A stretch of DNA of 63,716 bases, counting the filler, from Octopus bimaculoides (lineage: Eukaryota), in NCBI RefSeq assembly GCF_001194135.2. It is 11 parts of 9 records of this genome, joined end to end, with 100 filler letters (N's around TTAATTAATTAA, not from the genome) between each part and the next. Parts side by side here need not be neighbours in the genome. Positions count along the whole stretch, not along the records: positions 1 to 3,329 come from NC_068997.1; 10 more parts are not named here. The stretch is one strand, 5' to 3'. Of this stretch, positions 1-3,329 are shown piece by piece. The translations under genes and the position numbers were made by a program. The notes below the pieces were generated by a model. That model was not told the origin of the DNA. It ran no database searches and saw only the letters and a list, made by a program, of their open reading frames with translations. The stretch's first letter is position 1. Every line of letters begins with the position of its first letter.

Positions 1-316
1 TATCTAGCTCAGATACCAGGAAACCCCAAAATGGCTGAAGTTCAAAAGATAGTGCTCATGGGAACTGCCTATATCCTACGTAAAATACTGTCTATGTGAT
101 CTCAAATTTTGAAACAAACATATAATTTTCTTATGGTTTCTTAAACATTCACTAGAACAAAACTGTACAAATCCAAATATATGGTACCCTAGGCATAACA
201 CCTACATGAACTTCTAACTTGTTGTCTCTTGAGGTCTCTGGGTGAGACTTGGATTCAACTTGTACAAATGGAAAACAAAAGTCAAACATAAAATAATAAT
301 AATAATAATAATAATA
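1..316 (+). mobile_element. 3' end of an RLE-type (R4/Dong-like) non-LTR retrotransposon with (AAT)n tail
   Basis: Frame 1 reads YLAQIPGNPKMAEVQKIVLMGTAYILRKILSM* (1-99), the typical C-terminus after the restriction-like endonuclease. A 3' UTR follows and ends in (AAT)n at ~293-316. Confidence 0.8.
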
Positions 317-1640
317 TAGTTTTAACATCATTAACTGGAATTTGACAGAGCTCCAACGCCTGGACAGGAAAACAAGAAAAATACTCACTTATATGAACAT
401 GCACCACCCCAAAACAAATATTGATTGTCTGTACCTCCCTAGAAGTATTGGGGAAAGAGGAATGAATGATGCAGACAGAAATGTGCTATAAGACCTCCAC
501 AATATCAATTAGCAAGTACCTATCTAGTACAAAGGACTGGATATTGCGACTTGTGAGCAAACACGAAAGCAGCAAAAAGTCACATTCGATTGTTAAGGAA
601 TCTTGCAAATTCGCAAGGTAACTTGACATTAATCTTGAAATAGTTGAAGAGCCTAAAACCGCTGCCTCAAAACAAGCAAAATGGATCAAGCAGACTGCAA
701 TAATGAATGGACAGAAACAAATTGAGGAGCTGTGGAGCCAGAAACCTCTGCATGGTCAGTATATGCTTCGAAGTCGAAATGCCGATGTAGATCAAGCAAT
801 AATCCATCAGTGACTGAGAAGTTGAGGACTGAAAGCAGAGACTGAAGGTTTTATATTGGCGGCACAAGATCAAAGCTTGCTTACCCAAAACTACCAGGCT
901 AAAGTCTTTCAAAACAGTTCTGACTCAAAATGCAGATTCTGCGACATATTTGACGAAACAATAGACCATTTCGTCTCGGAATGTCCTGCGCTGACACCAA
1001 ACGAATGTAAAAGTCGCCACGATACGGTAGGACAGTATTTACATTGGAAAATATGTAAACACTACAAAATCATCACTCCTGCTTACTGGTACAAACATCA
1101 TCCTGAGTCTTGAAGGTAAAAGTTTGACTATTCTCTGGGATTTTCCAGTCAACACTGACAGAACGATCCAGGCTAATCGACCAGACATAATTATTAAATA
1201 TAGGGGAAAAAGACTTGTACACGATTAGATATAAGTGTTCCCACTGATAAAAATATATCTGTCAAGGAATTTGACAAACTAAGTAAATATAAGGACGTGG
1301 AAATTGAACTACAAAAGATGTAGTATCTTAAAACGAGAATTGTTCCTGTTATTGTAAGTGCCCTAGGAATGATAAAAAAGCGATGTCAGAGACATCTAGA
1401 TAAGATCCCAGGAGAACCATGGCTCAGAGAAATCCAAAAGATTGTGGTGACAAGTACTGTCCACATCCTTAGAAAAACCCTATCCATTTAAATGTCTGTT
1501 TTGTATTACATGAAGATATTCACTACCTCCCCTCCACAAGCTTTCAGTTATAACAACTCTTATCCTTCACTCGCCCTAGGACGCTGGGTGTGTCTCGTCA
1601 AATGACTATAACAACCATGCTGATTAAAAGTAAAAATGAC
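313..1640 (+). mobile_element. 5'-truncated, decayed RLE-type (R4/Dong-like) LINE: zinc knuckle plus restriction-like endonuclease
   Basis: ORF 856-1113 has CRFC..ETIDHFVSECP..RHD..LHW.IC.HY (CCHC knuckle). Downstream frames give ILWDF..NTD.TIQANRPDI and EIQKIVVTSTVHILRKTLSI*. Multiple stops and frameshifts. Confidence 0.9.
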
Positions 1641-1986: not shown

Positions 1987-2157
1987 GTGTATATTAACTC
2001 TCACCATTGCCTTCATTTTGTTTTAACACCTTTTATGTATGTATATAAGCTATGTATGTATGTATGTATGTATGTATGTATGTATGTATGTATGTATTAT
2101 GTATGCATGTATATATGTATGTATGTATTTATGTATGTGTGTGTATATATGTATGTA

Positions 2158-2195
<38 letters not shown>
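1987..2195. repeat. Compound (TATG)n/(TA)n microsatellite
   Basis: Directly visible; explains ORF 1987..2196. Confidence 0.9.
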
Positions 2196-2197
<2 letters not shown>

Positions 2198-2407
2198 AAA
2201 GCAAATTAGCTAGTTAGAAAAGATGAAAGCAGTAACTATACTGTGAAGTAATGTTTATCAACACTTTAACATGGTTGTTCCATAGGAATCATCGTTACTA
2301 CCATTTTAACCCGAGGAGGATGCTTCCTCCAGCTGATTATTCGATGCAATCTGCACCCGATATATATTGCAAGTAGAGGAGCGGACCGTTACTGCCTTCC
2401 AGTGACG

Positions 2408-2469
2408 GGACAACCAGACAGCACTGTTTCGAACTATTTGTGCTCATCCTCAGTGGTGGATACTTGTCC
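2408..2469 (-). ncRNA. Type I hammerhead ribozyme, intact core, GUC cleavage site
   Basis: Minus strand: GGACA-AGUAUCC-ACCA CUGAGGA U GAGC-ACAAAUA-GUUC GAAA CAG-UG-CUG U C UGGU-UGUCC. All core nucleotides are present, with stems I, II and III. Predicted cleavage is between 2417 and 2416. Confidence 0.8.
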
Positions 2470-2717
2470 ACTAGAGATAACAGTACTTCGTTCCAGCTCG
2501 CAATATATAGAAAATAAGTGACTACCAGTCACTGATCATGTAACAAGCAAATTAGTTAAGTAGAAAATCTCTATAAGAGATTAAAGAAGTAACTATACTG
2601 AAAAGTAATGTTTATCGCCACTTCAACATGGCGTTTCTACCATTTTAACCCCAGGAGGACGCCTCCGCCAGCTATATATTGTGAGCTGCATATGTATAAG
2701 TAAGCACAAATGACGTA

Positions 2718-2810
2718 TAAAATTTACAACAGCTGTTTCGGTAGAATTTTAGTAATGCATTCATAGATTATATTATAACATACAGTTCATCATCATCAGG
2801 TAAAATTTTA
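2718..2810 (-). ncRNA. Degenerate type I hammerhead ribozyme
   Basis: Minus strand: UAAAAUUUUAC CUGAUGA U G...C GAAA CAGCUG U U GUAAAUUUUA. Stem I is 5+5 bp with one bulge and stem III is palindromic. Stem II is poorly paired with a long AU-rich insert. Confidence 0.5.
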
Positions 2811-3329
2811 AACGGGTCAGATTTTAAAACAAGTGGTACTTCTTGCATTAACCTGGACGGATCAAACGTCTGCTGGATCAGCTGATGTTGGATATGTTGC
2901 TCTGCGATACACTTCGACATCAGACGGTGTGGCATACCGTGCGCTTGTACAGGTAGTGGGGATTTGATAGAGGGAGTGAGCTAATGCATGGCACAAACAT
3001 TTGATTACAATAAACAAATGAGCTATTCAGATTGTTCATTTGTCGTCCACAACACGAAAATTAACCATGTGTGTATGTGTGTGTCAAGGAGCGGACTGAG
3101 CCGTCGTTCAATCGGGTACTACCCGAGAGTCCGGAGCTCTGAGAGGCCTGCACTCTACATGTTAACTCAACAAAAACATACATTCAAAAGAACCCGGTAA
3201 ACAGTTATGTCCAAGGGCCCATAAAACGCACAGTCCACTCCTGTGTGTGCGTATGTATATGTATTTGTGTGTGTGTGTGTGTGTGTGTATGTTTTCGCGC
3301 GCACCTGAGTGTGTGTGTGTGTGTATATA

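What the first reader, a model, noticed from the sequence alone, without database searches (positions are those of the whole stretch)
2361..2509. Intact hammerhead ribozyme capping a 149-bp rod-shaped, TA-flanked hairpin element
Seen (- strand): CUGAGGA core, one extra U, 4-bp stem II, GAAA, stem III with a 2-nt UG loop and a canonical GUC site. Stem I has 4 bp, a 7-nt bulge and 5 bp, then continues imperfectly (CUAGUG/CACUGG, UACUG/CAGUA, GAGC/GCUC) to terminal UAUAUAUUGC/GCAAUAUAUA. Known: natural type I hammerheads use a stem I bulge to dock on loop II; an extra nucleotide between A9 and G10.1 occurs naturally (e.g. CChMVd); short or palindromic stem III implies dimeric cleavage in Penelope-associated ribozymes. 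Inference: a probably active self-cleaving RNA that repeat finders would label a plain MITE.
Basis: partly seen in the sequence, partly recalled or inferred. Interest (0 to 1): 0.85.

Follow-up and report, generated by a model that had tools for sequence, protein, structure and literature searches.

The report
Hammerhead ribozyme in an animal repeat
The minus strand carries a complete type I hammerhead self-cleaving RNA motif of the kind already known in thousands of copies from animal retrozymes and Penelope-like retroelements, so it is a real but ordinary find, and whether this copy still cuts is untested.

Summary
On the minus strand (2461-2407) every invariant hammerhead nucleotide is present, with helices I, II and III and a GUC site; cleavage would fall between 2417 and 2416. 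It sits at the apex of a 149-nt imperfect palindrome (2509-2361). The descriptor occurs once in the window and in 0 of 6000 dinucleotide shuffles.

Rfam Hammerhead_1 gives only 13.8 bits (threshold 34). That model also misses natural relatives with the same extra U after A9. I found 12 such motifs in metagenome contigs; their helix I covaries. A model built from them scores the window at 41.4 bits.

[quoted passage not shown] Loop 2 (CAAAUA) and a UAU bulge seven to nine bases before the core match canonical retrozyme hammerheads.

"Probably active" is not established. The inactive rod fold is 11.8 kcal/mol more stable than the hammerhead fold, against 1.8-7.5 for 20 canonical relatives.

"MITE" is not supported. 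Two 85%-identical ~140-nt units, 339-357 nt apart, flank the hairpin, and a copy of the hairpin terminus precedes the upstream unit. This suggests a ~1.4-unit retrozyme-like repeat. A new member of a known kind.

The parts
2407..2461 (-). Type I hammerhead ribozyme motif: helix I, core CUGAGGA plus extra U, helix II, GAAA, helix III, the GUC site, and the helix I 3' strand.
   Evidence: Read from the sequence. The descriptor hits once here and 0 times in 6000 shuffles. Rfam RF00163 gives a full-length alignment at 2459-2411 with 13.8 bits and E = 1.6 in a 191-nt search. Model R1, built from 8 relatives that carry the extra U, gives 41.4 bits and E about 3e-12.
2416..2417 (-). Predicted self-cleavage site: 3' of C17 (2417), before U1.1 (2416), in the context GUC|UGGU.
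   Evidence: Its position follows from the hammerhead numbering applied. Cleavage itself has not been tested.
2361..2509 (-). A 149-nt imperfect palindrome ('rod') with hammerhead loop 2 at its apex. Terminal repeat UAUAUAUUGC/GCAAUAUAUA.
   Evidence: Fold energy is -50.8 kcal/mol (z = -3.6) on the minus strand and -52.4 (z = -4.6) on the plus strand. The arms match at 47 of 77 aligned positions.
2199..2341 (-). Direct-repeat unit A, copy 1, downstream of the hammerhead on the minus strand.
   Evidence: About 85% identical to copy 2, with two indels (families D4-D6).
2545..2680 (-). Direct-repeat unit A, copy 2, upstream of the hammerhead on the minus strand. Start-to-start spacing to copy 1 is 339-357 nt.
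2672..2688 (-). A copy of the hairpin's 3' terminus (CAGCUCACAAUAUAUAG) lying directly upstream of unit A2. It is 16/17 complementary to the hairpin's 5' end at 2510-2494.
   Evidence: inverted repeat I14, and direct repeat D8 (2351-2369 against 2663-2681, 79%).
2510..2544 (-). Linker between unit A2 and the hairpin. It holds a perfect 7-bp hairpin, AGUGACU-GGU-AGUCACU, followed by UAUUUUC.
   Evidence: and the sequence.
2034..2195 (.). Microsatellite, (TA)n and (TATG)n, abutting the end of unit A1. It may be the 3' tail or the target of the insertion.
   Evidence: (period 4, 41 copies).

Best explanation
This is a type I hammerhead ribozyme inherited by descent from the animal lineage of hammerhead-bearing retroelements: non-LTR retrozymes and the terminal repeats of Penelope-like elements (PLEs).

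It sits in an old, non-coding, non-autonomous repeat copy. That copy is most likely a ~1.4-unit fragment of a ~346-nt tandem unit. On the minus strand the order is: the last 16 nt of a previous hairpin, unit A2, a linker, the hairpin with the hammerhead, a spacer, unit A1, then a microsatellite.

How it would work when the minus strand is transcribed:
1. Helices I, II and III assemble around the core CUGAGGA...GAAA.
2. G12 and G8 catalyse attack of the 2'-OH of C17 on its 3' phosphate.
3. The RNA is cut between 2417 and 2416, leaving a 2',3'-cyclic phosphate and a 5'-OH.

In a full tandem array, two such cuts release a unit-length RNA. A tRNA ligase (RtcB) can circularise that RNA, and a retroelement reverse transcriptase can copy it back into DNA.

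This locus has only one intact ribozyme. It can cut a transcript once at most, so it is a dead-end copy.

Shown here: the motif is present, it is far beyond chance, and it matches a covarying natural class. Inferred: descent from retrozymes or PLEs, the tandem-unit reading, and the life cycle. Untested: catalysis. I put the chance that this copy still cleaves detectably in vitro at about 40%.
For: - The complete core and three helices are present at 2461-2407 on the minus strand.
- The descriptor hits 0 of 6000 shuffles.
- The pattern CTGANGAN{0,1}GNNCN{0,1}CAAATAGNNCGAAAC recovered 63 metagenome contigs that carry type I hammerheads.
- Twelve of those motifs have an extra base after A9, and in all 12 it is U. 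Seven also have the 7-nt loop 2 seen here.
- These motifs fall into five or more unrelated repeat families that share only the ribozyme.
- Their helix I, which the search pattern did not specify, covaries. 86.5% of cells are paired against about 30% with slid partners, and 5 of 6 helix I pairs change on both sides.
- Model R1, built from them without the window, scores the window at 41.4 bits.
- PMC4209133 lists the nucleotide between 9 and 10.1, the G10.1-C11.1 pair and the palindromic 15.2-16.2/loop 3 as PLE hammerhead hallmarks. It also says most copies are solitary.
- PMC7229834 describes animal type I hammerheads in 170-400 bp tandem units with under 50% GC that give circRNAs.
- The preprint 10.64898/2026.07.22.740005 derives retrozymes from PLE terminal repeats and reports frequent monomer derivatives.
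- For the tandem reading: two A units 339-357 nt apart, and a 16/17-nt copy of the hairpin terminus directly before A2 (I14 and D8).
Against: - Rfam RF00163 is below its gathering score (13.8 against 34) and reported nothing in the 3.3-kb scan.
- No homologous copy of the hairpin or of unit A was found, so conservation of the core among true homologues is untested.
- No PLE reading frame lies in the window.
- Only one hammerhead is intact. The sequence upstream of A2 shows no significant similarity to the hairpin interior.
- The hypothetical unit RNA folds as a branched structure rather than a clear rod (z about -3.5, mostly from the hairpin).
- The deviations from the canonical consensus could equally be neutral decay of a once-canonical ribozyme in an old copy. 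They are three small insertions, UAC to UAU, GCUC to GUUC, and a C.U mismatch in helix I. The two A units have diverged by 15%.
Confidence: 0.75

Rival explanations
1. Fossil ribozyme. The motif descends from a canonical retrozyme hammerhead but this copy is catalytically dead. The extra U, the extra A in loop 2, the UG insertion in helix III and the C-to-U changes are neutral decay. On this view the RNA simply folds into the rod. This rival differs from the best explanation only on activity.
For: - The rod fold is 11.8 kcal/mol more stable than the hammerhead fold, against +1.8 to +7.5 for 20 canonical relatives.
- The UG insertion creates the CACUG/CAGUG helix that buries C3-G5, and the extra U can pair with G12.
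- Helix II has only two G-C pairs, while relatives have GGCC, GUCC or GGUC.
- The A units are 15% diverged with indels, so the insertion is old.
- Canonical relatives score 49-56 bits in Rfam and this copy scores 13.8.
Against: - All invariant core nucleotides, the G10.1-C11.1 pair and the GUC site are intact.
- Both single-base insertions fall where natural, covarying hammerheads carry them.
- Viroid and retrozyme hammerheads are known to coexist with more stable inactive rods and to cleave during transcription (PMC4209133, PMC7229834).
- Nearest-neighbour energies ignore the loop-loop tertiary contacts.
Confidence: 0.45
2. The 149-bp hairpin is an independent MITE-type DNA transposon, with terminal inverted repeats and a TA duplication, that carries a hammerhead. 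It inserted between two copies of an unrelated repeat A.
For: - A perfect 10-bp terminal inverted repeat and a strongly folding palindrome on both strands.
- TA-rich borders.
- Removing the hairpin leaves two A units about 197 nt apart.
Against: - Six of the ten terminal bases are TATATA, which is self-complementary by nature.
- The TA duplication cannot be told apart from the repeat.
- The arms match at only 61%.
- A 16/17-nt copy of the hairpin terminus lies directly before A2 (I14, D8), which ties the hairpin and unit A into one repeat unit.
- No other copy was found.
- No hammerhead-bearing MITE family turned up in the papers I read.
Confidence: 0.1
3. A chance resemblance: a palindromic, AT-rich repeat that happens to spell a hammerhead.
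For: - The Rfam score is below threshold, with E = 1.6 even in a 191-nt search.
- The scan read many windows, so rare chance hits are expected somewhere.
Against: - 0 hits in 6000 shuffles.
- Beyond the descriptor, loop 2 is the family's CAAAUA, and a UAU bulge sits seven to nine bases before the core, where relatives have UAC.
- The insertion after A9 is the U seen in all 12 relatives that have one.
- Model R1 gives 41.4 bits.
Confidence: 0.03

Closest known systems
Minimal and variant type I hammerheads of Penelope-like elements (Cervera & de la Pena 2014, PMC4209133)
   Same: Both have an unpaired nucleotide between A9 and G10.1, the G10.1-C11.1 pair, and a short near-palindromic helix III that allows a double hammerhead. 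ACAGUGCUGU pairs with itself over 10 bp with two G.U pairs. Helix I is short. Most genomic copies are solitary. The Drosophila virilis variant likewise has a 2-nt insertion in helix III.
   Different: Helix II here is 4 bp with the canonical CAAAUA loop, not the 6-8 bp of PLE minimal hammerheads. A loop 1 bulge (UAU) sits in the canonical register. No PLE reading frame or second terminal repeat lies within the 3.3-kb window.
Hammerheads of metazoan non-LTR retrozymes (Cervera & de la Pena 2020, PMC7229834; preprint 10.64898/2026.07.22.740005)
   Same: Both are type I with a 4-bp helix II and CAAAUA loop 2, a bulge in helix I, and a short helix III with a tetraloop. Both sit in non-coding repeats with under 50% GC. 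The unit length implied by the A-unit spacing (339-357 nt) is inside the 170-400 nt range. The self-paired hairpin resembles retrozyme RNA structure.
   Different: Only about 1.4 units and one intact ribozyme are present, not an array. The extra U and the 7-nt loop 2 are not canonical. Circular RNA and expression are unknown.
Schistosoma mansoni Sm-alpha hammerhead, the consensus behind Rfam Hammerhead_1 (RF00163)
   Same: The alignment to the model is full length, 1-45. Shared strings are CUGA.GA, CAAAUAG, CGAAAC and GUC, and helix I starts ..CCA/UGG...
   Different: The score is 13.8 bits against a gathering score of 34. This is due to G7, the U insertion, the loop 2 and loop 3 insertions, weak helix II pairs and a helix I mismatch. 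Canonical metagenome relatives score 49-56 bits.
Extra-U hammerheads in metagenome contigs
   Same: The core is CUGANGA-U-G.., loop 2 is (A)CAAAUA, helix III is near-palindromic, and L033 and L036 also have G7. A model built on them scores the window at 41.4 bits. Like the window, they are missed by Rfam or fall below its threshold.
   Different: Their helix III is the 6-nt ACAUGU or ACGUGU. Helix II is GC-rich. They have no UAC-type bulge. There is no sequence similarity outside the ribozyme. Their source organisms are unknown.
Chrysanthemum chlorotic mottle viroid (+) hammerhead with an extra A between A9 and G10.1 (De la Pena & Flores 2001, cited in PMC4209133; the paper itself is not held)
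   Same: It is a natural, active hammerhead with one extra nucleotide at the same core position.
   Different: It is a type III viroid ribozyme, and the extra base is A rather than U. From my own recollection of that paper, which I could not check here, a U at this position was tolerated.

Membership tests
Hammerhead ribozyme, type I (Rfam RF00163) | Invariant core: C3 U4 G5 A6 N7 G8 A9, G12 A13 A14, A15.1-U16.1, and H17 that is not G. | tested here: met
   CUGAGGA is at 2453-2447, GAAA at 2430-2427, U16.1 at 2418 and C17 at 2417. One extra U (2446) follows A9.
Hammerhead ribozyme, type I (Rfam RF00163) | Three helices in type I topology (helix I open), with helix II closed by G10.1-C11.1. | tested here: met
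   Helix I is 4 bp (ACCA/UGGU) plus 5 bp (GGACA/UGUCC), or 6 bp with one C.U mismatch. Helix II is 4 bp (GAGC/GUUC). Helix III is 3 bp plus a tetraloop.
Hammerhead ribozyme, type I (Rfam RF00163) | Score at or above the curated gathering threshold of 34 bits. | tested here: not met
   13.8 bits, E = 1.6 in a 191-nt search, and not listed in the 3.3-kb search. The same model fails on extra-U relatives: L043 gets 22.9 bits, and L012, L033, L034, L036, L044, L054 and L060 are not reported.
Hammerhead ribozyme, type I (Rfam RF00163) | Site-specific self-cleavage giving a 2',3'-cyclic phosphate and a 5'-OH. | not testable with these tools
   This needs in vitro transcription and end mapping. Energetics are unfavourable compared with relatives (ddG +11.8 against +1.8 to +7.5 kcal/mol).
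Hammerhead ribozyme, type I (Rfam RF00163) | Conservation and covariation among homologues of this element. | not testable with these tools
   No homologue of the hairpin or its flanks was found in any reachable collection. Covariation was shown only for the motif class.
Hammerheads of Penelope-like elements (PMC4209133) | [quoted passage not shown] | tested here: met
   U at 2446. All 12 metagenome motifs with an insertion there also have U.
Hammerheads of Penelope-like elements (PMC4209133) | Palindromic 15.2-16.2 and loop 3, giving dimer-capable helix III. | tested here: met
   ACAGUGCUGU is self-complementary over 10 nt if the two central U.G/G.U pairs are allowed (read from the sequence).
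Hammerheads of Penelope-like elements (PMC4209133) | A long helix II (6-8 bp) and no loop-loop contacts. | tested here: not met
   Helix II is 4 bp with the canonical CAAAUA loop. A UAU bulge lies 6 bp from the core, as in canonical hammerheads.
Hammerheads of Penelope-like elements (PMC4209133) | Location in the terminal repeat of an element that encodes a reverse transcriptase and a GIY-YIG endonuclease. | tested here: not met
   None of the six longest stop-free frames (46-71 aa) of 1560-2060 and 2680-3329 has a Pfam hit. The only coding remnant is a LINE tail on the opposite strand. The paper notes that most copies are solitary, so this does not exclude descent from a PLE.
Metazoan non-LTR retrozyme (PMC7229834) | Head-to-tail tandem units of 150-450 bp, each with a type I hammerhead. 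| tested here: inconclusive
   Two A units lie 339-357 nt apart, and a 16/17-nt copy of the hairpin terminus precedes A2. Only one hammerhead is intact. The upstream region has just a CGAAACAGCUGU box and no significant similarity.
Metazoan non-LTR retrozyme (PMC7229834) | Non-coding, with GC below 50% and no LTR, PBS or PPT. | tested here: met
   GC is 45.6% in the hairpin and 37% in the window. There is no reading frame of 50 aa or more in 2199-2700.
Metazoan non-LTR retrozyme (PMC7229834) | Expression as a unit-length linear and circular RNA. | not testable with these tools
   No transcript data could be reached.
MITE (non-autonomous DNA transposon) | Terminal inverted repeats plus a target-site duplication. 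| tested here: inconclusive
   There is a 10-bp terminal repeat, but six of its bases are TATATA. The TA duplication cannot be separated from the repeat.
MITE (non-autonomous DNA transposon) | Many dispersed copies with the same ends. | not testable with these tools
   The source genome cannot be reached. No copy was found in the loci fetched or among predicted proteins.

The most novel reading that the evidence does not exclude
The hairpin could be the founding example of a hybrid hammerhead class. It would combine the canonical loop 1/loop 2 docking elements of retrozyme ribozymes with the PLE-type unpaired U after A9. A built-in rod-to-hammerhead switch would come from the UG insertion, which creates a CACUG/CAGUG helix that masks the core. 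The carrier might be a mobile palindromic element rather than a tandem retrozyme. Current Rfam models systematically miss the extra-U class.
Probability: 0.1. Interest if true: 0.5.

Novelty: new member of a known kind. Interest (0 to 1): 0.25.

Why it matters
Type I hammerheads in animal repeats are already known in very large numbers: over 6000 in a coral and over 120,000 in the axolotl (PMC7229834). One more copy does not change the picture.

Two practical points are worth keeping.
- Rfam's Hammerhead_1 model misses the natural class with an extra U after A9. Of the eight extra-U relatives scanned, one got a sub-threshold score and seven got none, and this window scored 13.8 bits. Genome annotations therefore under-count these ribozymes.
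- If this copy cleaves, it would be a natural example of a canonical-looking hammerhead that tolerates the 9/10.1 insertion while competing with an unusually stable inactive rod. That bears on how such ribozymes are switched.

Tried and rejected
1. Rfam on the whole piece found no hammerhead at E up to 10. The sub-threshold hit appeared only in a 191-nt search.
2. A scan of viral contigs with the hammerhead pattern found 0 matches.
3. A look-up of the window's 85-aa ORF, to reach the source contig, found nothing on record.
4. The nearest LINE relative (P0001, contig L001) gave only an unnamed ENA metagenome sample. Its sample codes are in no paper held.
5. I concatenated stop-free translations of the hairpin and unit A and searched for spurious ORFs on homologous repeats. 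Of 1555 candidates, none scored.
6. BLAST and Smith-Waterman of the window against all 63 metagenome loci found no similarity outside the 28-nt motif above the shuffled background.
7. A second hammerhead upstream (CUGAUGA at 2801, CGAAACAGCUGU at 2745) was rejected. It has no helix II, no Rfam hit, 8.8 bits with R1, and alignment to the hairpin no better than shuffles.
8. I looked for a PLE reading frame in the window and found no Pfam hit.
9. A tRNA-like or SINE origin was tested with ARAGORN, which found nothing. The bacterial promoter scan is irrelevant for a eukaryotic repeat.
10. The double-hammerhead energy could not be computed. The intermolecular helix III crosses helix I, which the nested cofold model cannot represent. 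The unconstrained dimer is simply two swapped rods.
11. The supplement of PMC7229834 holds no string matching this ribozyme.
12. De la Pena & Flores 2001 is not held.

Full report
**The observation**

- Helix I, 5' strand: GGACA (2469-2465), a 7-nt bulge AGUAUCC, and ACCA (2457-2454).
- Core: CUGAGGA (2453-2447), then an extra U at 2446.
- Helix II: GAGC/GUUC, closed by the loop ACAAAUA.
- GAAA (2430-2427).
- Helix III: ACAG-UG-CUGU.
- C17 at 2417.
- Helix I, 3' strand: UGGU and UGUCC.

Cleavage would fall between 2417 and 2416. The outer pairings down to UAUAUAUUGC/GCAAUAUAUA are all part of the minimum-energy fold (-50.8 kcal/mol, z = -3.6).

Five corrections apply.
- A 2-nt hairpin loop cannot form, so as a monomer helix III is 3 bp with a GUGC tetraloop.
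- Helix I can also be read as the canonical 6 bp (CCACCA/UGGUUG) with one C.U mismatch.
- The 'TA flank' cannot be separated from the TATATA of the terminal repeat.
- The arms match at only 47 of 77 aligned positions.
- The plus strand folds as well as the minus strand (-52.4 kcal/mol, z = -4.6). The rod is therefore a DNA palindrome and not evidence of selection on the RNA.

**Is it more than chance?**

A hammerhead descriptor hits once in the window and never in 6000 dinucleotide-preserving shuffles. The descriptor was CUGANGA, 0-1 inserted base, helix II of at least 4 bp closed by G-C, GAAA, helix III of at least 3 bp, H17, and helix I of at least 4 bp. A relaxed scan of both strands found no other credible motif.

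Rfam's Hammerhead_1 (RF00163) aligns over its full length but gives only 13.8 bits against a gathering score of 34, with E = 1.6 in a 191-nt search. It reported nothing in the 3.3-kb search. The alignment does show that loop 2 (CAAAUAG) and CGAAAC match the family consensus.

**Relatives**

One metagenome scan with CTGANGAN{0,1}GNNCN{0,1}CAAATAGNNCGAAAC returned 63 contigs. Most carry canonical type I hammerheads, for example CUGACGAGUCCCAAAUAGGACGAAAC-AGCUGU-C. These have a 6-bp helix I preceded by a CUAC bulge.

Twelve motifs carry an extra base after A9, and in all twelve it is U. Seven of them also have a 7-nt loop 2, and in six of those it is ACAAAUA as here. L033 and L036 share the G at position 7.

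These twelve motifs fall into at least five repeat families that share only the ~35-49-nt ribozyme. Their helix I was not part of the search pattern, yet it covaries. 86.5% of cells are paired against 15-39% with slid partners, and five of six helix I pairs change on both sides.

Rfam gives canonical relatives 49-56 bits. It gives L043 22.9 bits and reports none of the other extra-U motifs. Failing the Rfam threshold is therefore a property of this class and not evidence against the window.

A covariance model built from the eight distinct extra-U sequences, without the window, scores 2461-2407 at 41.4 bits, with a rough E of about 3e-12. The next best hit in the window scores 8.8 bits. This test is only partly independent, because the relatives were found with a pattern that the window also satisfies.

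**What the literature says**

Cervera & de la Pena 2014 (PMC4209133) describe hammerheads in the terminal repeats of Penelope-like elements (PLEs). [quoted passage not shown] The paper also reports dimeric action, low activity in vitro, and mostly solitary copies taken to be truncated PLEs.

Cervera & de la Pena 2020 (PMC7229834) show that canonical animal type I hammerheads lie in 150-450-bp tandem repeats with under 50% GC, called non-LTR retrozymes. These are expressed as ~170-400-nt linear and circular RNAs. Invertebrate hammerheads with a 2-bp helix III plus tetraloop cleave well as monomers. RtcB, not the ribozyme, does the circularisation.

A 2026 preprint (10.64898/2026.07.22.740005) derives retrozymes from PLE terminal repeats and reports many monomer derivatives.

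The window's ribozyme mixes both types. From the canonical type it has a 4-bp helix II, the CAAAUA loop, and a UAU bulge at positions -9 to -7, where relatives have UAC. From the PLE type it has the extra U and a near-palindromic helix III.

**Context**

The window is animal-type repeat DNA. The plus strand of 314-1633 is a decayed LINE 3' part. It is 81% identical in DNA to an ENA contig, has protein relatives in Clytia, Penaeus, Asterias and Montipora, and has a weak zf-RVT match. Another LINE end lies at 1-100. Microsatellites follow each LINE end. No PLE reading frame is present.

Two direct copies of a ~140-nt unit A (2199-2341 and 2545-2680) flank the hairpin. They are about 85% identical, with indels, and lie 339-357 nt apart.

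The 17 nt at 2688-2672 (CAGCUCACAAUAUAUAG) lie directly upstream of A2. They are 16/17 complementary to the hairpin's 5' end and resemble its 3' terminus (I14 and D8). Each A unit is therefore preceded by a hairpin terminus. This ties the hairpin and unit A into one ~346-nt unit. The locus then reads as: the 3' end of hairpin 0, A2, linker, hairpin 1, spacer, A1, microsatellite, or about 1.4 units.

Upstream of 2688 there is a CGAAACAGCUGU box at the expected distance, and a CUGAUGA box further up. There is no helix II, no Rfam or R1 hit, and no similarity above shuffles. I treat this as an unproven wreck at most. A hypothetical 346-nt circular unit folds as a branched structure, not a rod.

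**Is it active?**

This cannot be settled in silico, and the signs are mixed.

For activity:
- Every invariant nucleotide, the GUC site and the G10.1-C11.1 pair are intact.
- Helix III is at least as strong as in active invertebrate retrozyme hammerheads.
- The loop and bulge elements for docking are in register.

Against activity:
- Helix II has an A-U and a G.U pair.
- The rod fold pairs CACUG (including C3-G5) with CAGUG of helix III, and pairs the extra U with G12.
- Forcing the hammerhead fold costs 11.8 kcal/mol. That is -39.0 against -50.8 for the 149-mer, and -13.5 against -25.3 with 22-nt flanks. The cost is 1.8-7.5 kcal/mol for 20 canonical relatives treated the same way.
- The deviations from the canonical consensus are three small insertions and a few C-to-U changes. 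This is also what neutral decay would produce in a copy whose flanking units have diverged by 15%.

I put detectable in vitro cleavage at about 40%.

**Verdict**

This is a genuine hammerhead of the animal retrozyme/PLE lineage, in a solitary and probably dead-end copy of a non-autonomous repeat. The activity claim is unproven, and the MITE label is not supported.

It is a new member of a known kind and of low interest. The useful by-product is that Rfam's type I model misses the extra-U class.

No same-genome homologues could be reached. The decisive comparative test therefore remains to be done on the source assembly.

Noticed in passing
window 314-1633 (+) and 1-100 (+): A decayed LINE 3' part with frameshifts and stops, a CCHC-type zf-RVT tail and a conserved C-terminal domain. 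It is 81% identical in DNA to the ENA metagenome contig L001. Protein relatives occur in Clytia, Penaeus, Asterias and Montipora. A second LINE C-terminal end lies at 1-100. Each end is followed by a microsatellite: (ATA)n at 288-316 and (TG)n at 1704-1746.
   Followed up: partly
window 2801-2725 (-): CUGAUGAUGAUGA is flanked by AAAAUUUUAC/GUAAAUUUU, and 60 nt downstream lies CGAAACAGCUGU, the canonical palindromic helix III box. The box sits 52 nt before the copy of the hairpin terminus, against 48 nt in the intact unit. There is no helix II, no Rfam hit, only 8.8 bits with R1, and no similarity to the hairpin above shuffles. It may be the wreck of a second unit, or chance.
   Followed up: yes
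window 2494-2510 and 2672-2688: A 17-nt inverted repeat (16/17) encloses the linker and unit A2 (161 nt). It is a better terminal pairing than the hairpin's own 10 bp. On an RNA, the hairpin's 5' end could pair with either partner.
   Followed up: partly
window 2533-2510 (-): A perfect 7-bp hairpin, AGUGACU-GGU-AGUCACU, followed by UAUUUUC, lies just upstream of the hammerhead hairpin. The T run could act as a Pol III stop signal for an upstream unit. This was not tested.
   Followed up: no
window 2434-2426 and 2476-2469 (-): GUUCGAAAC (the helix II 3' strand plus GAAAC) resembles a Pol III box B. UCUAGUGG, 35 nt upstream, resembles box A only weakly. ARAGORN finds no tRNA-like fold, so this is probably coincidence.
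   Followed up: partly
L012, L033, L034, L036, L043, L044, L054, L060 (metagenome loci): A natural class of type I hammerheads with U inserted after A9 and an ACAUGU or ACGUGU helix III. It occurs in at least five unrelated repeat families, and helix I covaries. Rfam RF00163 reports only L043 (22.9 bits, below threshold), so the class is under-annotated.
   Followed up: yes
L006, L027, L030 (metagenome loci): Each contig carries two canonical hammerheads on opposite strands, 225-450 nt apart. This matches the arrangement of dual motifs on opposite strands noted for PLE-related hammerheads in PMC4209133.
   Followed up: no
window 2196-2185 and 2712-2700 (-): The sequences bordering the putative 1.4-unit insertion are similar: CUUAUACAUAU upstream and CUUUAUCAUAUAU downstream. 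They could be a ~10-nt target-site duplication, but both are low-complexity and TA-rich, so chance is likely.
   Followed up: no
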